Positions 676 through 55,702 of a stretch of 64,000 nt of DNA are shown here, in pieces; positions within the stretch are counted from its first letter, which is position 1; each line of letters starts with the position of its first letter. The translations under genes were made by a program, and so were the position numbers. A model generated the notes under the pieces. It saw nothing but the letters and a program-made list of their open reading frames with translations, searched no databases and was not told the DNA's origin. Source of the DNA: Adineta vaga (Eukaryota > Animalia > Rotifera); NCBI GenBank assembly GCA_021613535.1, contig CP075492.1, forward strand, positions 4,216,001 through 4,280,000, read 5' to 3'.

Positions 676-3600
676 ATGGAAAGTGAAATTCTTCAAACAA
701 ATACAATGCAACATCAACAAGATGAAAAAGATGATAGTGGAATTGAACAAGACAATAGTTTTATTTATATACGAATTGCTATCGAAGATTTAAATTTACA
801 AAAAGTACTTAAATTTAATCTTGATGATACTGTTTGGAGTGCAAAACAAAAAGTTTTACAAGTTCTTGTTCGAGTAAGAAGCAATATGATATGTTCGGTT
901 TGATTTATATTTGATTATTTTGTAGGAATTAATCGATGGATTAAATTTTGGATTATACCTACCGCCGAGTAATGGTCGAGCGGGAAAATTTCTTGATGAA
1001 TCTCGTTGTTTAAGAGAATATCCATTAAGTGGATCTGTTAGTTATCTTGAAGTAAGGAATATCTTTGAAAGAGAACCAAAAAATAAAGACGAAGATTTAT
1101 TTGTTTTAGTTTAAATATAAACGACGAGTTTATAAAGCAATTCATCTTGTACAGAAAAATTTGAATTCAAAAGTAAGTCGTCGAATGATTTGAATGAAAG
1201 ATTTTGAATTGATGAGATATGATAAATTTAGATTAGTACAAAGAAATTTATCGAATGTGTCAAAACAAATCAAGTTTCAAAAGTGTCGAGATATTTAGAA
1301 AAAGGATTTGATCCAAATTTTCATCTTTCTAATGATGGTAAGTTCATGAAGTTTACATAGTAGAAGACTTTCAAGAAGACAACGATGAACTATTTATATA
1401 TAATTATAATAAAAAAAAAGAATCATTTCGAAGTCAGGGTTAAACGAATCGATATAACTAACTTCACTTCCACTTCTCTATCTTATATAAGAGTTCATAA
1501 TGACATGCACTTGATAAACAATACGATGAGAGGTTTGAATAAGTACATACTTCTCAAGTTTTGCCTCATATCAATCAACACTGCCTAGAGACATTTGGAT
1601 TTTTCAAAAGAAATAGTTCGCTGATAAGCAACGTGTTTGTTAATTTAGAAACTGCATTATCATGTGCATGTGTTGATTTACTCGAACCTCGATCAATGAT
1701 AATGACCTTGGTCAATGGTGGTGCTCATCTCGACTTTCGAACGCGTAATGGTGGTTTAACACCACTACATAAATCAGCTATACATTATCGAAAAGAATCG
1801 ATTGTCGTAAGTTGTATTGTTTATTTTTGTCAATCCATAGAAATTTTCTTTTTTCTTATTCAAACTAGACACTTCTTGAGCTTGGTGCTTCACCCAATGT
1901 TTATGATGAGAAAGGTTTAACTCCACTCTATCATACAGTTTTAAATAAACAATCGGAATCCATTAATGATTCAGCATATTGTTGTCAATTATTATTGCAA
2001 GATCATTCGATTGTTAATTGTCGAGATGATTATCTATCGTCAGAATTACATCAAGCCTGTCGTCTTGGTCTTGTTCAACATATTGAACATTTACTTTTCT
2101 ATCGAGCTGATATAAATGCAGTTAATGTCGCAGGAAATACTCCTTTACATATTTGTGCGGCAGGAAATCAAGTAAGATTTCCTTAATAATATGTAAAGTT
2201 GATTTTTGAAAATCTTTTTCTTTTTTTTTCTTTAGGAAGCTTGTACTCGTGTTCTTCTGTTTCGTGGTGCTGACACGAATATTGTAAATAAATCAAATCA
2301 AACAGCTTATGAACTTGCATTGGTTTCTCAAAATCCTTCCATAGCTTCGATTATTCAATCGCATAAACCGGATCATATTGTCCCATTTCGCGAAGCACCA
2401 TTAATCAATCCGAAACGTCGATCGGTTTATATCGAAGTTGATAAACATCGAACACGATCATCATCGACAACAACACCATCATTATCCTTAGCTAGTCGAT
2501 CACAAAGTATGCCTAAATTAAATGGTATCAATCTTTTACGTCGAAGTAATTCACCATCAAATGAACCATTTTCTCAACAACATCCATCAAGTCGGAGTTC
2601 ATCACCGAAATCATTTAGTGTTAATAGTGATCATGGATTTGGAAGTGAATGTGCATCTCATTTGTCATCAAGTAAGTCGAAAAGATTTTGATGGAAATCT
2701 TTAGTATTGAATTTATTTTTCAAAATGAAGATTCTCCAAATGCAACTAATGGTTGTTATACATATAAACGAAAACGTTTGTATGCAGCTGCACCTGGTCG
2801 AAAATGTATGTGTATTAAATCGTATCAAGCAAATTCATCTGGAGAATTATCGTTAAGAAAAGGTGATATTGTTGAAAGTAAGATAAAAAAAATTATTCGA
2901 ATGATAGATGATGTGAAAAATTTTGATTTTGTAGTTTTAAGTGTTGGTGAACAAGGATATTTAGAAGGAAGATGTCGAGATTTGGAAGGATGGTTTCCAA
3001 GTAATCATGTTCAAGATATTTGTGTTTTTAGTAAGTATTAAGAAAATTCAATGAATTTCTTCACATAAGATAAGAACAGTTGACATTGAACTAGTTCGTT
3101 TTAAAACTAAAGAAAATTGAGGTCGAAAGTTATTCTTAAATAATGAATATCTTATTCGATTAATTGTAGAAAATAATGAAATGACCAATGGTGATACAAT
3201 TGTTATTAGTCGTGATGCTCTATCTGCATTGATGATCAATAATGATACATGTGCACCACGTACTGTTGTATTACAACGTGGAAAAAAAGGTTTTGGTTTT
3301 GTTCTTCGAGGATCTCGAGGTAAATTCTTCTATTCTATGAAGTTCATATCTATTGATATTTATCTAATCTAGTTGCTGGAAAATTATTTCAACCAACTCC
3401 ATCATTTCCTGCTCTTCAATTCCTTGATAGTATTGAAAAAGGTAGTAACGCTGATAAAGCTGGTTTAAAACAAAATGATTATGTTCTTGAAGTAAGTGTA
3501 ATAGAAAAATATACATTCTTTTCGTAATTTCATACCAAAATGATTAGATCAATGGAATCAATGTTATATCCACACCACATGAAGATTGTGTGAATCTCAT

Positions 3601-6221
3601 TAAACGAGCTGGAGATACTTTAGCATTAAAAGTTGTTACAGTTAACATGCCATCAATGCTTTATTCTCATCAAGAATCACATTATGCTGCTTCTCAATCA
3701 TTACCATTTCGTCGTAAAGGTAAGTTTTTCAAATGAATTATATGATAAGAAAATCTCTTTCAATAGTCCTTCGTCCGAGTCTGAATAAACCTTTCGGTGG
3801 TATGTTCGCACATATTTTTCATATCTCAGCATGATTCTTTTCCTTCTTTTTTTAACTTCGTCACTTGCTTTAGTTTTCTCATCATCAAATAAATCCTTTC
3901 AATCATTGTTTATGAACAAAGGAGAGCATAATACCATCTTAGGTATTTCAAATCAGAATAGAAAAGCTAGCTAACTGCATGAAAAATTTTCACTAAAACA
4001 AAACATAGGAATTCTACTTGATTAATATCTCATATATATGTTTCTATTTTGTAGACGATCTGGATCGAACGTTAGCAGAATATGAATATGGAAGTATGTC
4101 TGAAGCGTATGTATCAATTGCAAAACAAACAATGGACAATATTCATAATGGATCTGCATCACTTCGTTTAAAGTAATGATTTTTCTTTTCTAAATCAACA
4201 AAATAAAAATCAATGTTTTTGTTTTGTGTTTCAAGAAGTAAACCAATGGTACCTGAACGAGATTCTTCTCTTTATGATTGTTTTACAAATACGACTCAAA
4301 ATCAACATGTTTATAACAGATTTCGTCCATTAATTCCTGCTGTTAGTGTTCCAAATCTAACATCTATGACAAATCTTCGTTGTAATTCGAATACGTCATC
4401 GAATGAAGCTGATGAAGAATCATCATTATCATCAATGAACAGTAATCAAATTGTCCAGCAAACAACTTCCATGGAAGAGAATGGCATTGGAATTTATATG
4501 ACACCATCTTTATCTTTAAGTACAACGAATATGTCGACGTTTAAAACAATCATCACTAATAATCCCTTACCGTCGAAACCAAGTGAAGTCAAACGACGAT
4601 CAAATAATCGAAAACAAATCTATGCAACAATTAATCTTAATAATAAAACCATCGAGAATGAAACTTCTGCTACTCCTGCACCACCACCTCCTCCTCCTCC
4701 TCCACCACCATTTCCAATGAATTTTGATTCATTCAATAGAATTCCACCTGCACCAGCACCTTCTATTCAACCAAAACCTATAAAAATCGAATCAGTCGCA
4801 ACAACAAATGATTTTCAAATACAAATTGAACAAGCAAAAAATCGTTTGAAGAGAGTTAGTCTTGAAACATCACCAACAAAAACAATAACAACAATAACAA
4901 CAACAACAACAAAAACCAATGGATTGATTAAATCAACTTATAAAAATCCTTCAAGTAATTATTCTTATTCTAATTGAAAGCAATTGAGAGAAAGAAAACA
5001 CTTGTACTCTTGACATTTTGTTTCTCTTATTTTCATATGACCCTAATAGTTATATGTTTATGTAACTTCTTACTATTGTTATGTAATATATCAATTGTAT
5101 CTACAATCATAACTTTTTTTTTATAAAAAGTTATGTCACAGGAAGTGAGAATGTTATAATCATCATATGTTGAGAAAAGGAAATAGTAATGAGAATTATC
5201 AATATCTATCATAGAGAAACTTACTAAGGTCATTTACACGTTTAAACAATGTCTATAATAATTATTTTTTTAAATTTAATTAGATGATTCAAATAATTAT
5301 CGTTCACCTGAATTGAAAAATATTATTATTGAAGAATTACCACCTACAAATGGTTTTCCTCCTCCACCATCACCAACAACACTTCGTCGTTCAACAACAG
5401 AAAAGTCATCAATCGATCCTCGATTAGATATTAATTTCTCTTCCGTTATTGCACAACGTGCAGCTGCTTCCAAAGCACGACGACATGATAATCTAACTGA
5501 ACTTGAATACAGTTCGAATGGTCTACCACCATCGACAACATTCTACAATCATTGTATTACAACAAATGGCATATCATCACATAGTAAGTAAAAATATTAT
5601 TATGAAATGTGTAGATTAACTGGTTATTTCAGCTCTTCATCACCATCGTTATTAAATTGTTATACAAATTTAATATATTTGTAAGAGATACGTGTGTATA
5701 TCATCTGGGATCTATTTACTTCTTTTTCGGGGTTATTTGTATCTATGAATTGCATGATAAGTCCTATATAGAGAATCAATTTCTTCTGCATGGACATATA
5801 TGTTTTAGTTCTTGTCGTTGTGTGTGTTCATCTTGATGTATGAAAATGTCGTATTACAAATTCATGCTAAAGTTAATCATTTCAAGAGAAATTCTTTGAA
5901 ATTGCCAAAAAAATAATATTCAATAATCGATTGCTCTCTTCTTTTCTTTTGGGAAGAAATTGATCACGCTGTTTTACTAATATACAATTAAAGCTTGACT
6001 ATGCTGGAGCATGTTTGGGAAAATTCTATTCATTCATTTAACATTTTCTTCGCTTCTTATCACATGATATTGTTCAATAGAGAAATTAATTTATCTGGAT
6101 CATTTTAGGTTCATCAAATCCACAACGATTTAGTGCGACAGCGAATCAATTATTAGAGAATCTCAAACGTCGTGGTGGAAATTTAACATCAATGGAACCT
6201 TTAATCAAACATTATAATTAA
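676..6221 (+). CDS. SHANK: SH3 and multiple ankyrin repeat domains protein (Shank/ProSAP), multi-exon
   Basis: Spliced exons give an N-terminal ubiquitin-like/FERM-F0 domain (IRIAIEDLNLQKVLKF...LNFGLYLPPSNGRAGKFLDESR), ankyrin repeats (GGAHLDFRTRNGGLTPLHKSA; GNTPLHICA), SH3 (RKRLYAAAPGR...LSLRKGDIVE...LEGWFP), PDZ (PRTVVLQRGKKGFGFVLRG...FPALQFLDS) and a Pro-rich tail. Candidate terminal exons are at 5633-5655 or 6109-6221. Confidence 0.93.
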
Positions 6222-8647: not shown

Positions 8648-9447
8648 TTTTAACAGTGTTAGTTTTCTCAAGAATTTATTTTGCTAACTGAGAGTAAATG
8701 AATAAATTTCTTTGTTTTATATATTTTTTAGACAATCTTCTAAAAAAAAGGGGGAAGGAAAGCTATACAAGAATTGTTTTCTAGATAATAGAGTAAAAAG
8801 CCTGATAAAATAAAACAATTATTTTGATGTTTTTACCTATTCTTGCGTCTTTCTCTGGAGAAAAATCATTAAAGAAAGTTCACCAGGGCTGTATTCTGTT
8901 CTAGAATATCATATGAAAAACGTTCTACTTTTCTTTTTACTTTTAAATGTCACCAATGCTCATCGTAACGTTAAAGTAATAACATTGTTTTTCCTCGCAT
9001 TCTGTTATGAACCAGCATTCCCTTTTTAATTATTTAAATTCAAAGAAGAAAATAGTAAAAACATATTTTTTTCCCCATCATCGCTTCTACTATTGTTTGC
9101 AAACCTTTAATCAAACAAAAGCATCGTCAGTAACCATAGATTTCTTTACTACCATCTTTTTGTTCTGTATTCATCGAATGATAAATTTTGATGAATTCAA
9201 CTTTTAATTGAATTTAATATCATATACTATATTGTTGTACAAAATAAAAAAAGAAAGAAAGAAAGAACATTATGAATGATAGCAGTCGACTATAAGAAAG
9301 AAAGAAAGATCCGATTGAAATAGATTTCTCCTGAAAATTCTCGTTACGTTTGAAATTCACCCGAAAAGAAGAGAGAGAGAGAAAATATTGACTGAATACA
9401 CAAAAGAGAGATTTAAAACAACCGTATGAACAAAAGAAAGATATGAG

Positions 9448-41000: not shown

Positions 41001-42472
41001 ATTGTACACCATAATTACGAAATTGTTTTTCAATGTTTTGTAGTTCTGTCAAACAGAGATTTTTTAATCCATCAAGCTAAATAGAACAAAAAGTGTTGCA
41101 TGTGATTGTCTGATCGATGTGAACAAAATAAATAAAATATAAGCATACCTCATTCGGAGTTATTCGACTAAATTTAAATCTCTTCAATTGATGACGTTCG
41201 AATAAAGATTTAAACTTTCGTAAGATTTCAGTAACTAATTTTTCATATCCAAATATTTCAATTTTATTCTTCAGACAATATTTACTGCAAGTAACCGAAA
41301 CAATTGAATTATCTTGTGAACATTGATTGATAATTTCATCGAACTCAGTATTATATTGTGTTGTTGGACAAATCCGATAGTTTGATAGAGTCTTTTGTGT
41401 ACGATTATCAATCAATTCAATTGTGAAGAATTTATCATTAGATGAAGTAAGTATACTTTTATGTAAAATGTTATTTTGAAAAATAACATCGATTTCTGTC
41501 GTATGATATGGAGAATTAAATTCATCATCATCGAAATAGTAAATATCCAATGTTTGATTGCATTTTCCCGTTAATTGACATACTGTAAATATATGGGATT
41601 CAAGATCGAATATATTTTGAACAATACAATTTGGTTTTGATTGAAGTAATAATTTTGTAATGGTGTTTTGTAGATATCTTTTTGATTTGATTACTTCTTT
41701 TAAATGTTGAAGAAACCGTTCGACAAGCCGATTTTCTTGTTTTGTTCCAGTGACTTTAATGACATAGTAGACTGATGAATTATTATCGTTCTGATGCATC
41801 TGTTCAATTACAATTTCAATTGATTTTATTTCTTGTTTAATGAAATTAATTAAATGAGATTGTAATGCTCGATTTTTGAAAAATTTCGCTTGAATAATAT
41901 CATCAATGAAAAATAAAGCTTCCTGTCTGACGTTGTCAGAAACTATATTGTCTGGTTGTTCCTGTTAAAAATAGAATCGAGAGGTAGTGTCTTACATCGA
42001 AGTCATTTATCATCAATTCAAAAGTATTGATAATTACCTCGTTCGAATGAACTGGTGCGTTGACATTAGCTCGTACTACTGTTAGTGAATGATCAGAAGT
42101 TCTTAATTACGCATATATATATCTTACAATATAATCAAATGAAAAACAAATGACATACTCATTTGTTTTCTTCGCATTTTCTTGTTCATTCTGTAGTTTT
42201 AATTCCATTAATTTGATTCGAAATCTACTTTTTGCACCAATTGTTGTCTCTTGTATCGATCCATTTGGATCTATTTCCACTACTAATTGTGAAATATCCT
42301 CGTCAGTCATAGCCATGAGAGCATGGCCATCTATATTCTCATCTAATATCAAGAACATTCAATTTCTACAAGTGTGACAAAAAAACTAATTACCTTTGAA
42401 TATCTTTACTTGTCTCCTGAAACCATTGTCTTTTAACCATCTAGAGACTTGTTTCACCGACCAATTTGCCAT
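38057..42472 (-). CDS. SAM - KH-like repeats - macrodomain - TIR - unknown C-terminal domain protein (paralogue A)
   Basis: SAM (MANWSVKQVSRWLKDNGF.../DENIDGHALMAMTDEDI), macro-like (INIVTGDISQQK/VDIII...TTGGRLACKKILFV...SIAF), TIR_2 (YNIMLSHS...IILCISNNYFEDELCKKEATYA...IIAVKI). About 9 exons. Confidence 0.8.
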
Positions 42473-43334
42473 TAATTTCCGAGATCTAAAATAAATTATA
42501 ATGGTAAACTTTTCAACTGTTAACTTCTTGTTAAATCAATGCTTAAAACAATTTAGAACGTGTTATAAGAACTTGCGATCGGATTTTTACTACCTATTAT
42601 CTTGTTATTGTTAATGTGAATATAAAATAGATGTATAAGAAATAATATCAAAAATGTGTCCTAATGAAATTATTTATCCAACGACTGACGATAAGCTGCT
42701 TTGCCTACTGATCTGGCTATGTATTGTAGTTGTTTCTAAAGAGTTTTGACGGAAAAAGTCTCATATGGTGAATGATTTATGACTCGATGGAAGATTTTTT
42801 CGGTAACAGTTTATCCTCCTCTTAAAACTCTATGACGTTAATATACTTTTACTTTTTTTAAGATTTATTATCAAGAAAAAACCATTAATACAAAACAAAT
42901 AGAGTCAACGTATTTCGGTTGCTTCGAAATTCGACTACTATTTTTCAACAATCAGATTATTCTCTTCTGTTCTTACTCTTTAATAAACGACTTGTTCTTT
43001 ATATCTAGTTACTTCTCAAGACTTGTTATACTTATTTTCTTCTTTTTTTTCTTTTTTTCCTTTCTTGTAGTGCAAAAGATGATGATTATAGATGACACGA
43101 AGATACGCATAGAAACGGTTACCACCGTGATACATCAAAACTGATGAAACATCATTCTCCCATCCAGACAAATATAACTTTGTATATAGCCGTTTCCATG
43201 TCTGTCTTGTTCTGGTACTTTCTTTCAATTTTTCTGTATTTTTATCAGGTTTTTAAAATTATGAAAGGTTGTTAACGTCTTCAAACTTACTTTATACGTG
43301 ATAATAAGTATCTTACGAGTTTTGAGATTTAGAT

Positions 43335-46300
43335 ATGTCAGTAGGTAATTTGACTACTAATCAAGTTGGCGATTGGTTGACAACCAATGGATTTGCTGAA
43401 CATATCAAAACTTTTATAAGTATAGAAAAATTCTGATTGATAGTAAGTTTTAATTAGATTCTTTTTGTACCGAAATTAGGTGAAGACATCGATGGTGAAG
43501 CATTGTTCGGTCTACTTGATGATGAAATAATGAAACTATTAACTCTTTATGACAAAGACGGAACCATAAGAACTCCTACGAAAAGAAAACAACGTAAATT
43601 TAAAATAATATTGGAAGAATATCGAACATCAGTACAGCAAGAACGAAGAAAACGGAGAAGAAGCAGGTATGTAAATTTATATTTTCTTTCTAACGAATCT
43701 CTTCGTATTCTAGATCAGTAATAAACAAAGAATCTAATGAAAATCTTGCTATCAAGTAAGAACTAAATTGTAAAAGATAATATATTCTAAACATGTACAT
43801 TCATTCATTCTTAAGCTTACGCACGATGCCATCAAAAGTCACAGGTCAATCAGCCAAAGAACGATTAGCATATTCAAAAAATTATGTTGTCGAATCAACA
43901 ATCACGAGTTCGAAATTCTTTCAAAATGAAATGGTCACTTCGTTTTTAACGAAATATTATCTACGAAAATTTAATGTCAAGTATTATATATCAGCATATG
44001 TTTCATCTGATACAAAAGATACATTAAAAATCGAATTAACAGGTGATAAAGCAAATGTCACGAGTGCTCTGACTGATCTACAATTATTATCTGAAAGTAT
44101 AAAAATAAAAATTTTTGATAATCAAGAAACAGATCATAGAAGTAAGCGTTATGAGCTGTTTGTTGTCTTATAAATATGCATGCAATCTACGTTTTTGTAT
44201 AGTTATGAATTGGTCAACATCGATATATTCAGATTCTGTTCTTCTTATTTTGCAAAAAATCTTTGCTGATCGAAAGAAATTAACAATCTGGGAAAAAACA
44301 AATCTATTATCTGGTTATTTTATAGTTTATTATATCAGTGGAGAACATCGATTCAATCTTTCAGAAGAATTTATCTATCAAATGCTCAATAATGAAATAT
44401 CTTACGTGGAAAATATAGTAATATCAAACATGGATAAATGTCAATCTAACTTTCGAAGGGCAATCAAAGAATTTATCAATAATAAAAAACAACAACAAGA
44501 AAAACTTCAAACAATGACCATTATTTATTACCAATCTGTATCTCAATCAGAAATGAAAATCAGTTTTTTTGGATTGAAATATCAAGTTGATATTGCCAAG
44601 AAACAACTAAAACTATTGATTAATAAACATCAAATACGAACAATACGAATTGAACTCGATTCAAAACAGGTATAAATATATCAGATGATCGATTAGATAT
44701 GTGCATAATCATTCGTTCTTATTAGAAAAAAGTTTGACTTCACGTTTTTTCTTTTCTTTTGTAGCGTGAATATTTATTAGACAACTGTATTTCTCAATTG
44801 AAACAGATAGAATTGGATTATAAAGATGATAATGTTCATATTCAAATCCATTCAAATTTACTTACTGCACCACAATATCTCATTGTTAAAATCAAACAAT
44901 TGATTCAATCATTGCTCTTTCATACAACTACTCTTACATTTCGTTATATCGAAAACGGCATTACCTTAACTGAACATGATCAGCTACAATTGAAAACTAT
45001 CGGTCAAAATCATAATTGTCAACTAGATCATATCGATACACAAACGGAAAAGGAAATTATTCTATTACCGAAAAGCAAAGATACACCAACATCAAAATAT
45101 ATTATGAAAAAATCAGAAGAATTTTACACTTCATTAACACCAGTCTGGAAACTTTCAGTTGAAACAAATACAATAGAACTTCGTCCAGCATCTAATCCAA
45201 CAGTGAGTTGAATGATACATTTTATTGTGCTCTAGAGATTCTTGTTATTTGTAGAGTGATATAACTGTTATCTCAACAACGGAAGATATAATCAAAGAAA
45301 ATATTGATTCCATACATCGGAATGGTCATTTTATATCTGAAAATGGTAAAAATATTTTAGTAATACTATGGTCACCATTGAAAGATCCGATCGAAAAGTT
45401 GATTTCTACATCATTCAATCAGATTGATGTGTTATGTATGGACAGTATTGAGTCAATTGCGTTTTCTACAACTAATTGGGAAAAAATTGATGATAAAAGA
45501 AAATTGGCAGAAGAAATGATCAAAGAAATGAAAGACTTGCTCGAAACTGAAGACTTTGCCAATCGATCTTGGAAAATTTCATTCAGTTTTAATGATGAAC
45601 AAAATGATTTATTGAAAGAATTTTCGGAAATTATTATATCATTACGATTGGCAAAGAATGGTTATGAACAATTTACCTATCCCATAACAAGTATGTACGG
45701 AGATTGCAATGATCTTTTTTTTTGGAACCTGAATAATTCTTTAAGATGAATGATCGGGATTTTGATTCAGTGCTTAGAAAGTTAGTTGTCAATAGATATG
45801 TATCATATGTCTTAATCATACAGAAGAATCCATAAATGAAAATTTCTTCTTCATTCTAGCAACTTCATTAACGTTGAAAACATCGTCAAATTCAAATATT
45901 ATAAAATCTGAGAATGCAATCAATGACTATATGAAAAGATCTGTTCTCAGCACAATTGAAATTTATAATCCTTTCGATTCTAAAATATGGAATCAACACA
46001 TGATCAATGTATTTTATAAATATTGTTTGGAGAAATGTGTATTACCTGATATTCATCTATTCAATGAACAATATCATTTATATTTAATCGGCTCAAAATC
46101 TGCTGTTAATCATGCAAAAGAAAAATACAAATTCATGACGGAAATCGAACGATTAAAAGCATTAATTCATATTCCATCGTCAGAATCTGTGTCGAAGAAC
46201 AAAAACTCAAAGACTATTTCAAGCACTTATAATATCATATTAAATGGCTGTTCGAATGATAAAGATATATTAGAGAAGCTTGCAAAGCGTTTCAATGATG

Positions 46301-48029
46301 AAGGTTATCGAGTATTGATTGATTATTGTGATATCAATCCATCAAATAGCAAACCAAAACAACATTACAATAGCGATTTAATTGTTATCTGTTTTAGCTA
46401 CCATTACTCGCAAGATTCTAGTTGCATGAAAGCAATGTTATCTATTAAGAAATCTGAAAAGAAATTTATTCCATTCGTCTTATTAGAAAAAGCTTTGAAT
46501 GAAAGAAGTAATTGGATTCAGATGTGCTCCACCGAAACACTCTTTTATGAGTCATTCGAAGAAGAAATCAGATTTAAACTTGAAGAAAACTTCGATTTGG
46601 ACTATGATAAGTTATTTATAGAATTAGTAAGTATGTTTTTATTGATACACTTGAGATTAACATAAAGGACTTGCCGTAAAAGAATGTTAAATGAAATTAC
46701 AAGATTCTATCTTTATTTGTAGCTTCATTATACTAAACCTGGTGTAGTCGATCGAATCTATGCAATATCGGACGATGTCACTAGTACAGAACAACGTGAA
46801 GAAGATTTTAGTCTTAAAAGAACACTCTCGCCATTTACCCAAGAACAAATTTGTAAAAAAGAAGAAATTTATCGAGAAAAAATTGAACATATCTTAGAAC
46901 GAGATGCTATTCCAACGGATGAAGTGACCAATTTAATTGCATTACTAGGTATAATTCTTGGAGATAACGGAATTGAAGGATATCCCGTGTTAGTAGAAGA
47001 CCATCAACCACAAGATGACGGATACATAAATCGTAAGTAACATCAGCTAATCCTCGAATAGTGAAATATATATAAAAGAGGAGTATCTAATAATCCACTC
47101 GGTATTCTATAAATTGATATAAATCATTATTCAAATCTTATACAACTAGTTATTCCTTTAAATGTCACAAAATTTCTTTATCGATTCATATTCTATGAAG
47201 ACAACTGAACAACGTTTTTTTTTTCATTAAAGCTGTAGGTGTTCAAGATTATCTCAACTCTTTTTTATTACGTCTACAACGATGGATAGAAAAGGCATCA
47301 AATGGACCCGTCTGTAAGGGCAATATACCACCCTTTACCGTGACTGGCGACTTCAATGATGCTATATTTCCGATTTCATTATTGGACAAAACTCCTTGGT
47401 GGGAAACCGATTTGGATTTATATGATTTTGATCATTCTTCAACAGATTTTGATAAAGTCTCTCCAGAGTTAACTATCGGTTCATGGAGCAGTTATGATGA
47501 AGCACAAAATTATTTTCAAAAACTTGTCAACAAAGATGCTCGATTTCGTGATAAACAACTGAACAATAAAAAATCACAAGTACCAAGTAGAAAACAGCAC
47601 GCATATTTCAAAACGAATATTAAACGAGGTACTATTGCTTGGGATATCACTGAAAATCGACGAGTTTTAAAAGAATATGAACGCAGAAAGAATGGTGGAA
47701 AAAGAAAGAAACTAAATTCAAAAACACGTAGTTCGTTGAATTTGTTGGATCGATGGGTTCAATTAGTATCAGATCTAAAAGAAGGTAGAATTAACATGAA
47801 ATCAAATGAAATACGAGGTACAATTGGAAAAGAATTGAAAACAAAAGACGAAATCAGAAAACGTATAGAATCAGACGATCCGAATAATACACAATGGTCA
47901 ATGGAACGAGTTCCGCCAAGGCGACGAAAGTTCATCAAATTGAAAATCAAGAATACAATTGAATGGGAAAATTTCTGTGAACAATCCGAATTGAAAGCTC
48001 AATCAGTAACTATACAAGATACAACGTAA
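43335..48029 (+). CDS. SAM - KH-like repeats - degenerate macrodomain - degenerate TIR - unknown C-terminal domain protein (paralogue B)
   Basis: SAM (NLTTNQVGDWLTTNGF.../EDIDGEALFGLLDDEI), WNQHMINVFYKYC shared with paralogue A, TIR_2 (YNIILNGCS...LIVICFSYHYSQDSSCMKAMLSI...FIPFVL), and a TGDFNDAIFP motif. Confidence 0.78.
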
Positions 48030-48147
48030 AATCGAATTTTTCATTTCATATTAACATATATTTTTCGCAAAAACATCTGTGATTAAATAAAACAAAATTT
48101 ACATGAAAATATGTTCTTTTTTTTCAGATAAAAATCATTTGAATTCC

Positions 48148-50437
48148 ATGGATTTGTTACTTCAACGGTATCAACAAAAAATTCGTCAATTTCATAAAAC
48201 TGAACGTATTGCTGATATCAAAGATCTTCTCGACGATATCGTATCATTTTTAAACGGTACAATCTCGAATTCAATCGATGGTTTACATCTTTTATCAGTA
48301 ATCTGTTTTGAATTAACATCAATTCATACATTAAAATGCTTTAATAATTCTGAAATAATCAATCATGAATTTTTCATTCTACTTCGTAGTACATTAATGA
48401 TGTTACTATCGAAATTAACATTTACAAACTTATCAAAACCAGAGAAACAATGTTTAGATGCAATTAGTTTATTTATCACTCAATTATGCTTATATAAAAA
48501 TCAAATTTCTTTAAATTTCTTTATTGATAATAATGAACAATTGGATCCAAATAGCAAACATACAATTCATTTATTATCCTATGAAAAAATCTTTTTTTCA
48601 GAATTATTTATTAAAAAATTTATTCGAATCTTAAATGATGATATATCTGTTAAAGAATATAAACCATATCATATCAAATATAAAATTGTTGATCGTTTCC
48701 TTCGAATAGCAATGAAATGGATTGATACTAATTACAAATTACTTCTTGATTCCATCGTTAAATGTCTTGAATCATCAATTTATTTGAATCTTTATAAAAC
48801 TATTGATCTGCGTCAAATGATCTTAAGTCCAAAACAATCATTTTTCATGTATCAATGTCCGAAATTTATTCGTCTATGTAGTCAAACTCGTCAAGTCGAA
48901 ATATCGGAGATCCTATCGAAATCAATGATACAATTTAGTAATGATATCTTTGACATACAATTAGGAACTGTATTGGATGGTAAATCAAGAACTCAAGTTC
49001 TTTCATGGTACATTGAATTATTGAATTATTTTGCTTTAACACCGAATACAAGAGAATTTTTTGTTCGAAGTAAGTTTGTATTAGACATCAGTAATTTGAA
49101 GATATACGATGTAATGAATGTGAATGTTTTTGTTGAACTATTCATTTTTAGGAATCAATTTTAGTACGACAATGGTCGATCATATGATTGGAATCTTGAG
49201 AAGTGAACCATTAATTATAAGTGTTCATAAAAATGCTGAACTTTTTCATGCTGATGTTGCTCTCATGTCATATTCAATAACATTGTTATATAATTTAACA
49301 TTTGAAAAGAAAATCTTTTATGATTTGAAATATCGAAATGTAATATCTGTTTGTGAGAAACTCTACGAAGCAATCGATCGAACAATACAATTTGCATCTC
49401 GAACTTTAGGTGCTATTTTAAATCAAGAAGATATTGATGAAATTGATAGTCCATCAAAAGTAGCACGATCCTATTTATATTTTATTGAAAATACAATTGA
49501 TGATATCACTCTTACATATCATGGAATCAGATTAGATGGTGTATTAACAAATCTTGAAAGTATAATATTAAGAAAAGCTTTCGCTTTTTTTTTCTACTGA
49601 TATTCTGTTTTAGCTATTGTTCAAAATGATGAAATTAAAGAAGAAATAACGAATGATGGCGATGGTATTCCATTAATTGCACGATGTGCATATGAACCAC
49701 ATCTTGATATCGTCACAATTCAACGTCCAGCTCTTCGAATTCTTGATGCAATATCATTTGCCAGTCGGTCAGCAATAGAACAGATCAAAGAAAATGATAT
49801 TTTAATGGATCATATTAAAGATATCTCACGACGTAATGATCGATATCAAATATCAACAGCAAATCGTCTTCTATGGAAAGTAGAAGAAGAAGCTGAATTT
49901 ATATCAAAACAAGACACACGAAAGAAACCGAAACGAATAGAAATTAAGAAAATTTTCAATGAAAAAGAAGCGATTTATCAATATGTTCAAGGAGATTATT
50001 ATTTTCAATTGACTGATGATATCAATTTAAATCAATACGATATTATGATAAGTTTTTGTCACGATGATATAAAAATATGTCGTGATATTTATAATCATCT
50101 TCTAAATTTAAATCTCTATCGTATTTCATTTGATGAAGATAATACACATGAATTAAATCACAAACGAATGGCACAAACAATTGAAAACTCTTCGATTGTT
50201 ATTATATGTTTTTCAAATAAATATCGCTTGTCTTATGCTTGTCGATTAGAAGCGGAGTATGTAGTGAAACGACAACGTCCGATTATTCCAGTGAAAATTG
50301 ATCCACGATATGATCCAACTGGATGGTTAAGTAAAATTATTGACAATAAAACAATTGTTGATTTGACAAAACCGAATTTTCAAAATGCATGTCAACAATT
50401 AGTTGATGAAATCTATCAAACAAATGCAGTACAATAG
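48148..50437 (+). CDS. Helical/ARM-like repeat - TIR domain protein, 3 exons
   Basis: Long helical N-terminus with ARM-like segments (LLYNLTFE; GIPLIARCA...ALRILDAISF; ANRLLWKVE). C-terminal TIR_2 YDIMISFC...MAQTIENSSIVIICFSNKYRLSYACRLEAEY...PIIPVK...PTGWL. Confidence 0.85.
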
Positions 50438-50537
50438 CAATCTTGACAAAACAGACGAATAAAACCTTTTCATTTCTAATAAAATACTTTAGAACGATTG
50501 TTTTTGTATTTTATTGTAGATATAAATTAGAAACGCA

Positions 50538-52496
50538 ATGACGAAAGATTATATGGTACTCTGGTTAGATACAAATCGTGTGTTTTCCAATGAGGAAAAT
50601 CAAGAATTCATCTCTCGATTACGATCCATCGTTGACACTGTCAAAGTCTATAATCAACTCGATCAATGTATTGAATTTCTCGAGAAAATTAAAGATGAAA
50701 AAGTTTTCTTGATTATGTCCGATTGTTTTGCTCGACAAATTAGTTCACTCGAAGAACAATTCAATCAATTGAATTCGATTTATGTACTTTGTAATCAAGA
50801 ATTTAAAGTTAATGAAATTGTGCAAACATATAGAAAAGGTAGAGGAATTTTTACTAAAATGGAACAACTTTGCAATGAATTAAAAAAAGATATTCGTCAA
50901 TTAATTAACGATTCAGTTTCGACAAGTATTATTCCGGCAACGGCAAATATGAATGATCTCAAAGGACTTGATCCAATATTTATGTATTCTCAATTATTAA
51001 AAGAGAATCTTTTTACAATGGAATACGATTATAAGCAAGAACTCGAACGATTTCTTGATTATCGCCGTAGGTTTTATAAAAATGATTTGATAGAAAAGAT
51101 GACAATTGAAGATCTTAAAAATAATTACCATAGAAAAACACCGATTGAATGGTATACAATGGAAAGTTTTTTATTTAGAATGCTTAATCAAGCCCTAAGA
51201 GAATTGAATATACAAACGATTATTCGAATGACATTTTATCTTCGTGATCTTCATGAACAAATTAAGCAACGACATTCCGTATCAGATCTTAGTACTTTTC
51301 CACATACTATTTATCGTGGTCAAGGCATGTTTAAGAAAGATTTTGATGAGCTGCTCAAATCAAAAGATGGTCTCTTCTGTTTCAATGTTTTTCTTTCGAC
51401 TTCATGCAGCAAAGATGTTGCTTTGAGATTTGCTCGTTATTCTCAGTGTGATAGTGCTAAAACGTCAATTTTATTTGAAATTAAGATTGATCCACCAATG
51501 GCAACATCTTTTTTTAGTGATATTCGAGAATTAAGTCAATTCTCAGAAGAACAAGAAGTTCTTTTTTCTTTGTCTCCGATTTTTCGAATTGGTGATATCA
51601 AACAAATTGAAGAACGTCTATGGCAAGTTAATCTTACTCTGACAAATGAGAAAGATCCACTACTCAAACGTCTTACTGATCATATGCGAATTGCACTTGG
51701 TCGTGGCGATGTTTGGCATAAATTAGGTCAATTGATGCTTAAGACAGGTCAATATAATGATGCTTTAGAAACATATAAAGTATTACTTGAAAATGTTGAA
51801 CCGAACGATAAAGCAGAAAATGCTTTTCTTCACAATCAACTTGGGTATATTTTAAAACAAAATGATCAATTAGAAGATGCATTTTTTCATTGTCAACAAT
51901 CGATCAAAATTTATCGAACATACATGACAGAAACTGATGCTCGTTTATCAAGTGCTTACTCAAATATTGGTGGAATCTTGAAAAAACTAGGTGATGCTAA
52001 TAGTGCATTGAAATTCTATGAACTTGTCTTAAAAATTGATCTTTCTGCAGCAAAGCCAAATCAATTAGAAATCGCTGTTGATTATAATAATATTGGTGCG
52101 GTACATGATGATCTTGGAAACTATTCCGAAGCACTCAAAAGTTATGAACAATCATTAGATATTAAACTTAGTCATCTTCCACCTCATCATCCATCAATGG
52201 CCAGTACTTATAGTAATATAGGATCAATACATCAAAAGATGGGAGATTGTTCAACTGCATTGTTATTCTATGAAAAAACACTAGGAATTCAGAGAAAATC
52301 TTTACCACCAAATCATCCATCACTCATTGTTACCTATGGAAAATTGGCAACCGTATACGAACGATTACAGCGATACGAAGAAGCCATTCAAAATGCTAAA
52401 ATAGCTGTTGATATCGCTGGTAGAGCGTATGGTGCATCACATCCAGAAGTGAGTAAAAGACAAAATTACTATGATGAACTTCTCAAAAGACTTTAA
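50538..52496 (+). CDS. ADP-ribosyltransferase (ARTC/R-S-E class) - TPR protein, intronless
   Basis: N-terminal LWLD...CIEFL...KVFLI...SIYVLC domain; ART motifs WYT...LNQALR, IYRGQ, FLSTS and EEQEVLF; about 6 kinesin-light-chain-type TPRs (PPHHPSMASTYSNIG). Confidence 0.92.
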   Translation: MTKDYMVLWLDTNRVFSNEENQEFISRLRSIVDTVKVYNQLDQCIEFLEKIKDEKVFLIMSDCFARQISSLEEQFNQLNSIYVLCNQEFKVNEIVQTYRKGRGIFTKMEQLCNELKKDIRQLINDSVSTSIIPATANMNDLKGLDPIFMYSQLLKENLFTMEYDYKQELERFLDYRRRFYKNDLIEKMTIEDLKNNYHRKTPIEWYTMESFLFRMLNQALRELNIQTIIRMTFYLRDLHEQIKQRHSVSDLSTFPHTIYRGQGMFKKDFDELLKSKDGLFCFNVFLSTSCSKDVALRFARYSQCDSAKTSILFEIKIDPPMATSFFSDIRELSQFSEEQEVLFSLSPIFRIGDIKQIEERLWQVNLTLTNEKDPLLKRLTDHMRIALGRGDVWHKLGQLMLKTGQYNDALETYKVLLENVEPNDKAENAFLHNQLGYILKQNDQLEDAFFHCQQSIKIYRTYMTETDARLSSAYSNIGGILKKLGDANSALKFYELVLKIDLSAAKPNQLEIAVDYNNIGAVHDDLGNYSEALKSYEQSLDIKLSHLPPHHPSMASTYSNIGSIHQKMGDCSTALLFYEKTLGIQRKSLPPNHPSLIVTYGKLATVYERLQRYEEAIQNAKIAVDIAGRAYGASHPEVSKRQNYYDELLKRL

Positions 52497-52998
52497 TTTG
52501 TTTTCCACATTTTTCAATATATATATACATATTTAGCTATGGTGTTCTTCTTCTTCAACACCCATTTGCTCACACCAAAAATATTTTATAAAAAGAAACA
52601 GAACAACATCTTTAAATATCACATTCATCGATTGTGAATCATGATTCTTTCTCTTCTTTGTATTTGTAATGAGTTATTGTATTTAGTATATCTATTGACT
52701 TAAATCGATTTCGATTTCGTGAATATTATATTTGATCGAAATTAGAAAAACAATATCTATTTTAGATTTAAATAATAATATTTTTCAAATTATATTGATA
52801 TCTACGTAAATGAATTAAAAAAAAGATTGGTTTAGTAGAAAAATTTAAAAGTATTAGTCTTTAATTTGAAAGAATAAGTAAAGAAAAATGATTGTTCGTT
52901 TAAAATGGTAAATGTTGGTTTTGCTTCGACTATTCTATAAATAAAAATAACAGTTGAATAATGTTGAAGATACCTAATGATTTTCAAAACATACGTGT

Positions 52999-53223
52999 CT
53001 ATTTGCCCAAGCATCCACAAATATGCATACATGATGGCCATGATCCACATCCTCCAGGACATGTGCAGCCTCGAATCTCAAGAAGTTCTTCAAGTTTTCG
53101 TAATTGAAAGTCAGGATCTTCATTACCATTCGAAAACGATATGAATGCTGTTGATGTCATAGCAATGGTAGCCATAAGTATAATCACAATAATCCAAGCA
53201 CTTGCATTGTTTTTAATAGACAT
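52999..53223 (-). CDS. Secreted cysteine-rich peptide precursor (6 Cys, probably amidated)
   Basis: Signal peptide, acidic propeptide ending in Arg, mature region GCTCPGGCGSWPSCMHICGCL and a terminal GK. Confidence 0.7.
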   Translation of the reverse strand: MSIKNNASAWIIVIILMATIAMTSTAFISFSNGNEDPDFQLRKLEELLEIRGCTCPGGCGSWPSCMHICGCLGK

Positions 53224-54033
53224 AATATATATTTTTGAAATATTAACGATGGAAAGTAATCGACGTTTATATGTTGTTTAAGAATATAAACTATGGTTTA
53301 TATAAGTTATTAAATGAAAAAGAAAATTTTCTATCAAATGTTTTTCTTTTTGCTTTTAATTCAACCGTATCGACATTTTTATACTATTATATGATAATAA
53401 GAAAATAATAGATATTTGTTTGTTTAGTCATGATTGGTAGAAAACTTAGATATTTATATATCGATATATCATGATAAAAATTTCTTTGTTTTTTTTTGTT
53501 TGTCGACAAAGAAAAAAAGTCTTTCGCGTAAAATATGCATTCCTTTCAAAAAAATCGTATACATACGAAATATTTCGATTAGCTCATTAGTTATTAATCG
53601 ATTCGATTACATTTATTTAGGACGACAAGAAGAGATAAAAATAAGAGAAGAAAAACATAGAGATATGAAAAGCTGATATTATAGTTTCTTTTTTTCTTTT
53701 CTTTCTTATTATTTGTATGATTAGCTTGTTTTCTGTACATATGTTTTTAACAGTCCTCTTGCATCTATAAAAATTTTTTCGTACTAACATATTTATCAAA
53801 ACACAATAGTAAACATTCGAATACAAAACATTAAACATGTGATGTACTGTTCTATGTTTATTGAGTAAAACACGATTATCTTCAATAATGAATAAGCGAA
53901 AGACAAAACATCTTATAACGATCATTTTGTATTTTTGAAGAAATTAAATTTATCGTTCGCAGTGAAGTTTAATAAATTCTTTTTAAAATATATTATACAA
54001 ATAAAATAGATTAAAAAAACGAAATTAATAATA

Positions 54034-54256
54034 GAATCGTGTAGGGTAATTCAGATCAATCTTGACATCTTCCCACTTTTTTCGCTAATACTTTTTTTTG
54101 GCACATGGTATCAAAGAGATTCTTTCACCAGTAGATAGAGCATGTTTAGTTCTAGTTGTGGTGAAAAAATTACCTTTCTATCATGTCTAACGGCTGAGAA
54201 CGAAACAAAATATGATCGTCGACTCGAGTTTTGATCTGAATTATCCCACACGACTC
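54034..54256. mobile_element. MITE-like element (223 bp) with 26-bp terminal inverted repeats and TA flanks
   Basis: Left end GAATCGTGTAGGGTAATTCAGATCAA versus reverse complement of the right end GAGTCGTGTGGGATAATTCAGATCAA (23/26). TA at 54032-54033 and 54257-54258. Confidence 0.65.
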
Positions 54257-54408
54257 TATAAAGTTTTGAGTATTGTTCTGAAATCCGGAAAAGTAAAAAT
54301 CAAGAAAAATTCTGTGAAGAGATTCAACAGTTTATTTGACAAAGAACTATGTACAATGAAAAAGAGAAATCATCTGATATGAAGAGAAGTGATTTAGTTC
54401 ACTTTTTA

Positions 54409-54484
54409 GGGTGGGTGTGGGTGAGGGTACGGGTGGATAAAGACACTGACTTTCACCCTTCCGCAGCCTCAACCACACCCACTC
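54409..54484. repeat. GC-rich imperfect inverted repeat with a G-quadruplex-type arm
   Basis: GGGTGGGTGTGGGTGAGGGTACGG pairs with CCGCAGCCTCAACCACACCCACTC (20/24 identical to its reverse complement). Confidence 0.6.
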
Positions 54485-54789
54485 ATCCAGAACACAATGA
54501 AATAGAATAGTACTCGGTGGACGATGATTATGGTTGAGACAGACAGCAGAAAACATTTATTGAAGAATATTGCCCTTTCTCTTTAGCTATAAAGATATTA
54601 GAGATTTTTCCGAATTTTTGTTTTCCGGATTCCAAGACATATTCAAGTTTTGCATTTCTATAATAAAGATATGAATGTGAATCAGCGACATCTTTCCTTT
54701 CTTGGATTAGCGAATGGAGTTTCACTTCCAGCCATTCAGTAAACAATTTCTAGAATTATTATTTTCATTTTCTCACCTTGAATTTGTCG

Positions 54790-55583
54790 ATGAGCACGGG
54801 AACTAGTGATCAAATCACCACAGCAATTACCATTCCGATTGAAGATCCTTTAAAAGCAAAAGTAAATCAAATGAGTGATGAAAATTTCCTATCGAATACT
54901 GCAACTGACCGAATTGATATAAAACGTGTTCGATACCCACATTGTCTTGTTTGGACACCAATTCCTGTTTTGACATGGCTTTTCCCATTTATTGGTCATA
55001 TGGGTATTGCTCGTACAGATGGTGTTATTCGAGATTTTGCTGGACCTTATTATGTTTCCGTATGTATTAATCAATTTCTGATTTCTAATAGAATAAAATC
55101 AATGAATATATTTTGATAGGAAGATAATATGGCATTTGGTTTACCAACACGATATCTTCAACTGGATTTGAATCGTATATCAATGCTAGGCAGTTCAACT
55201 AATATACGAACTGTTTGGGATAAAGCTGTCGAACAAGCATCCGATGAATATAAGAAACGAATGGTAATTATTGAACTTTTAACTTTTCTTGATATTATAT
55301 GTTTTCTTTAGCACAATTTATGTTGCGATAATTGTCATTCGCATGTAGCCATGGCTTTGAATACAATGGGCTATGATCGAAAACAGACATACAATATGGT
55401 TTCATTAACATTTTGGATGTTTTTCTGTGGAAAATTTGTCAAGTACGTAGACTTATATGTCAATCTCGCTTTTCATTCTTTCATTTTTCTAGTTTTGCTG
55501 GTTTTCTTCGTTCTTGGATTCCATTTCTTATCTTAGTCGGTATTGTTGTTACCATCACTGTCGTTACAAAATTACAAACATAA
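54790..55583 (+). CDS. TMEM222: Transmembrane protein 222 (RTE1-like family), 4 exons
   Basis: [26 protein letters not shown]...[16 protein letters not shown]...[17 protein letters not shown]. Confidence 0.93.
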
Positions 55584-55702
55584 TCTCAAAGTCGTCAAAA
55601 AGTTTATTTATGACAATCTACATTCATTATTTTTTCATTTCCTTTCGATTGAACATAATTTAAGAAATAAAATGTATGAATTATATAAATATTTTTAAGA
55701 CA

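What the first reader, a model, noticed from the sequence alone, without database searches (positions are those of the whole stretch)
43335..52496. Probable polycistronic operon (SAM-macro-TIR B, ARM-TIR, ART-TPR) resolved by spliced-leader trans-splicing
Seen: stop-to-ATG gaps are only 118 bp (48029 to 48148) and 100 bp (50437 to 50538). Each gap contains AATAAA (about 48086; 50458 and 50478), a U-rich tract, and a 3' splice acceptor about 20 nt before the ATG (TTTTTTTCAG at 48127; TTTTATTGTAG at 50519), leaving little room for a promoter. Established: bdelloids use SL trans-splicing, and nematode operons have this roughly 100-bp intercistronic layout. Inference: three immune-like genes are co-transcribed, which independently supports functional linkage.
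Basis: partly seen in the sequence, partly recalled or inferred. Interest (0 to 1): 0.8.

Follow-up and report, generated by a model that had tools for sequence, protein, structure and literature searches.

The report
Candidate spliced-leader operon of rotifer immune genes
Three NAD-related, immune-like genes of the rotifer Adineta vaga lie head to tail only 100-118 bases apart, each downstream gene preceded by a conserved splice-acceptor site, which fits an operon cut up by spliced-leader trans-splicing; no RNA available here shows the leader or a joint transcript.

Summary

These features are not chance.
- A T-rich YAG|AT(A/T)AA site lies 9-37 nt before the conserved start codon of gene 2 in all 10 copies examined (three A. 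vaga paralogues, seven loci of other bdelloids).
- A comparable site precedes gene 3 in all 8 copies.
- No strong cis donor lies upstream, except at Rotaria gene 3. The sites are therefore orphan acceptors, most likely spliced-leader (SL) acceptors.
- The genome holds 42 SL RNA genes.

Such short gaps are unusual. Only 2 of 39 sampled ART-TPR paralogues have a same-strand open frame ending within 150 bp upstream. All three A. vaga gene1-gene2 pairs keep gaps of 118-138 bp.

Co-transcription itself is not shown. The low-depth RNA contigs gave no SL and no contig bridging a gap. One contig runs from gene 2 through both AATAAA to the acceptor. Orthologous gaps reach 327-1452 bp in A. steineri and Rotaria.

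The layout (AATAAA 34 nt before the acceptor) is tunicate-like rather than the nematode 100-nt type. I put the operon reading at about 0.5.

The scan has flagged similar candidates elsewhere in this genome (s1-482656, s1-489498, s1-502387).

The parts
42473..43334 (.). Divergent intergenic region between gene 1 and its head-to-head paralogue on the minus strand. It is the only long non-coding stretch upstream of the cluster and the candidate site of a shared promoter. T-rich AG|AT sites lie just before both ATGs (AG at 43331-43332 on the plus strand; on the minus strand, 15 nt before the ATG at 42472).
   Evidence: Sequence read. The promoter role is inferred, not tested.
43335..48029 (+). Gene 1: a multi-exon SAM...TIR protein. 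The first intron is 43420-43479. The other introns were inferred from GT..AG sites and reading frame. The last exon is about 47233-48029.
   Evidence: Pfam TIR_2 E 1.5e-8 and SAM_1 E 0.008. RNA contigs lie only on exons. No macro hit was found.
48030..48147 (+). Gap 1 (118 bp). It holds ATTAAA/AATAAA at 48082-48091, a T-run ending in CAG at 48113-48127 (the candidate SL acceptor), and a 20-nt leader at 48128-48147.
   Evidence: The acceptor is conserved in 10/10 gene 2 copies. No strong donor lies within 400 nt upstream. No RNA contig covers this gap.
48148..50437 (+). Gene 2: an N-terminal helical-repeat domain followed by a C-terminal TIR domain. Exons are 48148-49069, 49152-49559 and 49614-50437.
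   Evidence: Intron 49070-49151 is confirmed by a spliced RNA contig in run X1. Intron 49560-49613 is inferred. Pfam TIR_2 E 1.1e-14. The fold of exon 1 is an ARM/HEAT-like solenoid, weakly supported.
50438..50537 (+). Gap 2 (100 bp). It holds AATAAA at 50458-50463 and 50478-50483, a T-rich tract ending in GTAG at 50499-50519 (the candidate SL acceptor), and an 18-nt leader with an in-frame TAA.
   Evidence: An RNA contig of run X4 covers 50346-50520, that is, the gene 2 stop through both AATAAA to the acceptor.
50538..52496 (+). Gene 3: a single-exon ADP-ribosyltransferase plus TPR protein of 652 aa.
   Evidence: Pfam ART 28 bits (cut-off 22.3) and TPR_12 E 4e-40. Orthologues at 57-61% identity occur in Adineta steineri and Rotaria. 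RNA contigs run to at least 52599.

Best explanation
The window is from Adineta vaga chromosome 3. Genes 1, 2 and 3 form a conserved, tightly packed, same-strand cluster.

Shown:
- Gene 2 and gene 3 are each preceded, 18-20 nt before the ATG, by a conserved 3' splice site that has no cis donor partner.
- An AATAAA ends 34 nt upstream of each of these sites.
- The genome carries 42 SL RNA genes.
- All three genes are expressed as spliced RNA at a low level.

Inferred:
- RNA polymerase II starts in the 860-bp divergent region upstream of gene 1 and reads through the whole cluster.
- Each upstream mRNA is cleaved and polyadenylated within about 40 nt of the next acceptor.
- The 23-nt spliced leader is trans-spliced at 48127 and 50519, which caps and releases the mRNAs of gene 2 and gene 3.

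This is the layout of tunicate or 'SL1-type' operons, which have almost no intercistronic spacer. A weak internal promoter (a hybrid operon) is not excluded.
For: - Coordinates are confirmed.
- SL genes are present, with the SL sequence followed by GT, in 42 copies. The SL sequence is as in PMC3795323 Table 1.
- The acceptor before gene 2 is conserved in 10/10 copies: three A. vaga paralogues, A. steineri, two Rotaria and four environmental or Logan contigs. It lies 9-37 nt before a conserved MDLL start.
- The acceptor before gene 3 is conserved in 8/8 copies.
- No strong donor lies within 400 nt upstream of the nine gene 2 acceptors scanned. Frame and phase between acceptor and ATG are not conserved, so the leader is non-coding.
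- The gaps are short for this genome. Only 2 of 39 ART-TPR paralogues have a same-strand open frame of at least 100 codons ending within 150 bp upstream.
- All three A. vaga gene1-gene2 pairs have gaps of 118, 138 and 125 bp. An unrelated bdelloid contig has gaps of 69 and 108 bp.
- An RNA contig runs from the gene 2 coding sequence past both AATAAA to the acceptor, while introns are uncovered, so the material is RNA.
- The four-gene block was duplicated as a unit, without its downstream neighbour.
Against: - No SL-bearing contig and no contig bridging either gap were found. Gap 1 and the first 650 nt of gene 2 have no RNA coverage at all.
- Orthologous gaps are 471/327 bp in A. steineri, 580/696 bp in Rotaria sp. 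Silwood1 and 1452 bp in R. sordida. The tight spacing is therefore not a fixed feature of the cluster.
- Rotaria gene 3 has a GTGAGT/GTAAGT donor 55-57 nt before its acceptor, which suggests its own 5' exon and promoter.
- Microsynteny extends to the unrelated RTE1 gene and beyond, so conserved gene order alone is not specific to this trio.
- Operons have not been reported in rotifers (PMC7986045).
- A promoter inside the upstream gene cannot be excluded by sequence.
Confidence: 0.5

Rival explanations
1. The three genes are independent transcription units in a compact locus. Each gene has its own promoter, embedded in the last exon or 3' UTR of the gene before it. SL trans-splicing merely trims a short outron, so the genes are neighbours but not co-transcribed.
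For: More than half of bdelloid mRNAs are trans-spliced whether or not they sit in an operon (PMC1925144, citing Pouchkina-Stantcheva and Tunnacliffe 2005). Gene 1 and its head-to-head partner also carry T-rich AG|AT sites before their ATGs, although they face an 860-bp intergenic region. Orthologous gaps of 327-1452 bp leave room for promoters, and Rotaria gene 3 seems to have its own 5' exon. No bridging RNA was seen.
Against: In A. vaga only 82-98 nt separate the upstream stop from the acceptor, and only 54 nt in contig L088. That space is filled by the poly(A) signal and the pyrimidine tract. No conserved promoter-like motif was found upstream of the acceptors. Three ancient paralogous pairs keep gaps of 118-138 bp, although typical gaps in the genome are several hundred bp.
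Confidence: 0.33
2. The acceptors are cis-splice sites. They would belong to 5'-UTR introns, or to read-through fusion transcripts that join exons of the upstream gene to the next gene.
For: One A. steineri gene model fuses genes 1 and 2 into a 2029-aa product. In A. vaga the exon ending at 47032 would join in frame to 48128 (my frame count). Rotaria gene 3 has a donor 55-57 nt upstream of its acceptor.
Against: Five of ten acceptor-to-ATG leaders contain an in-frame stop, and the phase differs between the gene 2 copies. No strong donor lies within 400 nt upstream of the nine gene 2 acceptors scanned, nor of six of eight gene 3 acceptors. The fused model is a gene-finder product, not RNA evidence.
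Confidence: 0.07
3. Chance: AATAAA and T-rich AG strings are common in DNA with 20-25% G+C and have no function here.
For: AATAAA occurs about once per 570 nt per strand in the window. The 12-mer around the gene 2 acceptor is not enriched genome-wide (252 matches against 431 for the reversed control).
Against: The acceptors sit at the same place before the start codon in 10/10 and 8/8 copies, which are otherwise unalignable in the gaps.
Confidence: 0.03

Closest known systems
Tunicate operons (Ciona, Oikopleura) and the rare SL1-type operons of C. elegans
   Same: A single SL is used for both operonic and monocistronic genes. The upstream poly(A) signal lies almost next to the downstream trans-splice acceptor, with little or no intercistronic spacer (PMC7986045). 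Here AATAAA ends 34 nt before each acceptor.
   Different: SL addition and polycistronic RNA are not shown here. Tunicate operons were defined genome-wide with cDNA evidence. Metazoan operons are mostly housekeeping genes (PMC12460157), whereas this cluster is immune-like.
C. elegans SL2-type operons
   Same: Same-strand genes lie about 100 bp apart, with a poly(A) signal, a U-rich tract and a 3' splice site in each gap.
   Different: The nematode figure of about 100 nt is measured from poly(A) site to trans-splice site, and a specialised SL2 is used. Bdelloids have one known SL, and here the whole stop-to-ATG gap is 100-118 bp.
Other operon candidates flagged by this scan in the same genome (s1-482656, s1-489498, s1-502387)
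   Same: They are head-to-tail clusters with gaps of 74-140 bp in A. vaga. One follow-up note reports the SL on downstream genes.
   Different: Those clusters hold unrelated housekeeping genes. I did not test them, and they are leads only.
SARM1-like NADase signalling and bacterial TIR/ART defence gene clusters
   Same: SAM, helical-repeat and TIR domains, plus an ADP-ribosyltransferase, are encoded side by side. All of these are NAD-linked.
   Different: The domains are split over separate proteins. No catalytic residue or activity was tested here. The resemblance is by domain content only.

Membership tests
SL-resolved eukaryotic operon | Two or more same-strand genes separated by very short distances | tested here: met
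   The gaps are 118 and 100 bp. This is rare for the genome: 2 of 39 sampled paralogues have an upstream gap of 150 bp or less.
SL-resolved eukaryotic operon | The organism has SL RNA genes and SL trans-splicing | tested here: met
   There are 42 genomic copies of the 22-23-nt SL followed by GT. The SL sequence is given in PMC3795323, and more than 50% of bdelloid mRNAs carry it (PMC1925144).
SL-resolved eukaryotic operon | The SL is added at an acceptor just upstream of each downstream gene | tested here: inconclusive
   Conserved orphan acceptors are present. However, no SL-bearing contig was found in four low-depth RNA runs, and a metagenome scan for the junction gave only chance hits.
SL-resolved eukaryotic operon | A polycistronic precursor RNA spans the intergenic gaps | tested here: inconclusive
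   One RNA contig covers 50346-50520, from the stop to the acceptor. No contig bridges into the next coding sequence, and gap 1 is uncovered.
SL-resolved eukaryotic operon | A single promoter upstream of the first gene and none in the gaps | not testable with these tools
   No 5'-end or chromatin data could be reached. No conserved motif was found upstream of the acceptors.
C. elegans SL2-type operon | A specialised SL2 and a spacer of about 100 nt between poly(A) site and trans-splice site | tested here: not met
   AATAAA ends 34 nt before each acceptor. Only one SL family was found.
TIR domain proteins (genes 1 and 2) | Pfam TIR_2 match above the gathering score | tested here: met
   35.6 and 55.4 bits against a cut-off of 28.
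Arginine ADP-ribosyltransferase (gene 3) | Pfam ART match above the gathering score | tested here: met
   28.0 bits against a cut-off of 22.3, plus strong TPR_12. Catalytic residues were not examined.
Macro domain (claimed for gene 1) | Sequence match to a macro family | tested here: not met
   No Pfam hit at E up to 1 on any exon, and no PDB sequence hit. The fold was not tested.

The most novel reading that the evidence does not exclude
This would be a conserved animal 'defence operon'. SAM-TIR, helical-repeat-TIR and ART-TPR genes would be transcribed as one polycistron and resolved by spliced-leader trans-splicing. It would be among the first operons described in Rotifera. It would also be unusual in holding immune-type NAD-consuming genes rather than housekeeping genes.
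Probability: 0.4. Interest if true: 0.8.

Novelty: new member of a known kind. Interest (0 to 1): 0.55.

Why it matters
The literature I could search says that operons have not been reported in rotifers, even though bdelloids trans-splice more than half of their mRNAs (PMC7986045).

A confirmed operon would add a phylum to the list of SL-operon lineages. It would also bear on how trans-splicing allows promoters to be lost in compact genomes.

Co-transcription of two TIR proteins with an ADP-ribosyltransferase would be direct evidence that these hugely expanded bdelloid gene families act together. That would be a useful entry point into bdelloid innate immunity.

It matters for annotation too. 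The public models here are truncated (494 aa for gene 2 in A. vaga) or fused (2029 aa in A. steineri).

Tried and rejected
- **Loose ends in run X1.** The loose ends at 47811 and 52787 map to chromosome 3 near 13.08 Mb. They share only 18-21 nt with the window, so they are microhomology chimeras or mis-laid contigs, not junctions.
- **Exact-protein look-up of gene 3.** Nothing was returned; records of this genome appear to be withheld.
- **Metagenome scan for an SL-plus-leader junction.** It gave 25 hits, none with the rest of the SL.
- **Logan and JGI contigs of orthologues (L019, L020, L086-L089).** All are genomic DNA. None carries an SL or is spliced.
- **Genome-wide counts.** The acceptor 12-mer is not enriched (252 matches against 431 for the control), and AATAAA upstream of it is not enriched either.
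- **Shared promoter-like words upstream of the acceptors.** Only AATAAA-type words and a TTTGGTTTGTAT block were found.
- **Conserved gene1-gene2 protein fusion.** Rejected, because in-frame stops occur and the phase varies.
- **Rfam and tRNA scans of 42000-55000.** Nothing was found.
- **Spliced proteins.** They were searched exon by exon, by reference only.
Full report
**Identity of the DNA.** The window is G000:C3:4216001-4280000 of a 100.8-Mb genome in six contigs, with about 30% G+C. A public protein named 'I4U23_011939 [Adineta vaga]', lying on a contig of exactly the length of C3, matches part of gene 2 at 100% identity. The organism is therefore the bdelloid rotifer Adineta vaga.

**Observation.**
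- Gene 1 stops at 48027-48029 and gene 2 starts at 48148, a gap of 118 bp.
- Gene 2 stops at 50435-50437 and gene 3 starts at 50538, a gap of 100 bp.
- ATTAAA/AATAAA lie at 48082/48086, and AATAAA at 50458 and 50478.
- T-rich tracts end in AG at 48127 and 50519, which is 20 and 18 nt before the ATGs.

**Domain content.** Pfam confirms TIR_2 in genes 1 and 2, and ART plus TPR in gene 3. SAM is a weak hit in the first exon of gene 1. 'Macro' finds no support from Pfam or from a PDB sequence search. For exon 1 of gene 2, an AlphaFold model built on 13 sequences (pLDDT 79) is an all-helical solenoid. Its best PDB matches are armadillo or HEAT proteins such as CNOT9 and importin-4, and they are weak (E about 0.02, TM 0.43-0.50). 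All spliced genes were searched exon by exon, by reference.

- The runs gave only short contigs at depth 2-5.
- The contigs lie on exons and leave the predicted introns uncovered.
- One contig skips 49070-49151 (GT..AG, 82 nt).
- The material is therefore RNA, and gene 2 has exons 48148-49069, 49152-49559 and 49614-50437. The second intron is inferred.
- All three genes are represented.
- No contig carries the spliced leader, and none bridges a gap.
- Positions 48000-48800 have no coverage at all.
- One contig of run X4 covers 50346-50520. It runs from inside gene 2, through the stop and both AATAAA, to the base after the acceptor AG, with five further letters that do not fit.

The X4 contig shows that transcription from gene 2 reaches the gene 3 acceptor. 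It would also fit polyadenylation next to that acceptor, but it cannot prove either an operon or a poly(A) site.

**Spliced-leader machinery.** The 23-nt bdelloid SL printed in PMC3795323 (Table 1) occurs in this genome 42 times, followed by GT, with only its first base differing. The copies often form inverted pairs. More than half of bdelloid mRNAs are reported to carry it (PMC1925144, citing Pouchkina-Stantcheva and Tunnacliffe 2005). Wenzel et al. state that operons have not been reported in rotifers (PMC7986045). My literature searches found no later report.

**Comparative evidence for the acceptors.** Gene 3 has clear orthologues at 57-61% identity in A. steineri, three Rotaria species and several environmental contigs. 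Its best paralogue within the genome is only 43% identical. I compared the following loci:
- three A. vaga clusters: this one, a second at C3:4.864-4.878 Mb and a third at C3:14.26 Mb;
- A. steineri, R. sordida and Rotaria sp. Silwood1;
- contigs L019, L086, L087, L088 and L089.

| Site | Motif | Distance to ATG | Copies with the site |
|---|---|---|---|
| Before gene 2 | T-rich YAG\|AT(A/T)AA | 9-37 nt before a conserved MDLL start | 10 of 10 |
| Before gene 3 | T-rich (T/A)AG\|ATA | 7-146 nt | 8 of 8 |

The rest of each gap cannot be aligned between copies. No strong donor (of the GTRAGT type) lies within 400 nt upstream of the nine gene 2 acceptors scanned, even where the gap is 440-540 nt long. 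For gene 3, only the two Rotaria copies have such a donor, 55-57 nt upstream. The leaders between acceptor and ATG contain in-frame stops in five of the ten examined, and the phase differs between the gene 2 copies. A conserved protein fusion is therefore excluded.

These are orphan 3' splice sites under selection. In an organism that trans-splices most of its mRNAs, that makes SL acceptors the most likely reading, at about 0.8.

**Is the tight spacing unusual and constrained?** I took 40 ART-TPR paralogues. For 39 of them I measured the distance from the first in-frame ATG to the nearest upstream same-strand open segment of at least 100 codons. The distance was 150 bp or less in 2 of 39, and typically 300-1500 bp. 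The measure is rough because it misses short terminal exons.

| Cluster or locus | Gap 1 (bp) | Gap 2 (bp) |
|---|---|---|
| A. vaga, this cluster | 118 | 100 |
| A. vaga, second cluster | 138 | 253 |
| A. vaga, third cluster | 125 | no gene 3 |
| L088 | 69 | 108 |
| L089 | 155 | 228 |
| L087 | 208 | not available |
| A. steineri | 471 | 327 |
| Rotaria sp. Silwood1 | 580 | 696 |
| R. sordida | not available | 1452 |

(Values.)

All three A. vaga gene1-gene2 pairs keep gaps of 118-138 bp, although their proteins share only about 30-48% identity. The tight layout is therefore recurrent and probably old, but it is not universal. In Rotaria, gene 3 probably has its own 5' exon and promoter.

The duplicated block in A. 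vaga covers the head-to-head partner of gene 1 plus genes 1-3. It does not include the downstream RTE1 gene. This argues for a functional module. Between species, however, microsynteny continues into RTE1 and the next gene, so conserved order alone is not specific to this trio.

**Layout.** In both gaps the last AATAAA ends 34 nt before the acceptor AG. In L088 the distance is about 18-23 nt. Cleavage of the upstream mRNA and SL addition to the downstream one would therefore fall within a few tens of nucleotides.
- This matches Ciona and Oikopleura operons and the rare SL1-type operons of C. elegans (PMC7986045).

Only 82-98 nt separate the upstream stop from the acceptor, so an independent promoter would have to sit inside the upstream gene. 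A search for shared words upstream of the acceptors found only poly(A)-type motifs.

**Verdict.**
- The sequence observation is confirmed and is not chance.
- SL acceptance at both sites is likely.
- Co-transcription is the most economical reading for A. vaga, but it remains unproven. I give it about 0.5.
- Independent promoters embedded in the upstream genes stand at about 0.33.
- Cis-splicing readings stand at about 0.07.

The scan has noted similar candidates elsewhere in this genome. I did not test them, and they are not counted as support.

**Dead ends.**
- The exact-protein look-up for gene 3 returned nothing.
- The metagenome scan for an SL-leader junction gave only chance hits.
- Genome-wide counts of the acceptor 12-mer showed no enrichment.
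- The two loose ends in run X1 share only 18-21 nt of microhomology with a locus at C3:13.08 Mb.
- Rfam and tRNA scans found nothing.

Noticed in passing
L013/L014 (G000:C3:4864001-4881000) and G000:C3:14251001-14270000: The whole four-gene block (the head-to-head SAM-TIR partner, gene 1, gene 2 and gene 3) has an old paralogous copy 610 kb away on the same chromosome, at 34-48% amino-acid identity. A third, more diverged gene1-gene2 pair lies at 14.26 Mb and has no ART-TPR gene downstream. No copy was found on another chromosome.
   Followed up: partly
window 52497-54700: About 2.2 kb separates gene 3 from the RTE1 orthologue (about 54700-55640, plus strand). In A. steineri the same two genes are 204 bp apart. 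The extra stretch holds a small Cys-rich ORF on the minus strand (52999-53223) and has RNA contig coverage at 52600-52787. Gene 3 has no canonical AATAAA within 300 nt of its stop.
   Followed up: no
window 47794-47811 and 52767-52787; L007 (G000:C3:13083722-13086751): Two contigs of run X1 leave the window at 47811 and 52787 and continue into one distant locus on chromosome 3 near 13.08 Mb. They share only 18-21 nt with the window, so they are probably template-switch or assembly chimeras involving a well-expressed gene.
   Followed up: partly
window 48148-50437; L016 1-7673: Public gene models are wrong here. The NCBI A. vaga model of gene 2 is a truncated 494-aa protein, and one A. steineri assembly fuses genes 1 and 2 into a 2029-aa product. 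This is the kind of error that tight clusters cause.
   Followed up: partly
G000, for example C1:2551158-2551338 and C5:9884354-9925971: The 42 SL RNA genes often sit as inverted pairs about 156 bp apart. They are concentrated in arrays on contig 5 (9.88-9.93 Mb and 10.91-10.93 Mb).
   Followed up: no
L017 7930-8000 and L018 7930-8000: In both Rotaria species a GTGAGT/GTAAGT donor lies 55-57 nt before the gene 3 acceptor. This suggests a short 5'-UTR intron and a separate first exon.
   Followed up: partly
L019 about 95-110; L088 about 8675-8690; L089 gaps at 3196-3350 and 5672-5899: A TTTGGTTTGTAT block recurs shortly after the stop codons of genes 1 and 2 in several bdelloid contigs. It may be a UGUA-type 3'-end processing element or a 3'-UTR element.
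   Followed up: no
whole genome G000: The ART-TPR family is very large. The first look gave 852 candidates, and all 103 that were scored had E below 1e-65 against the N-terminal 401 aa of gene 3.
   Followed up: no
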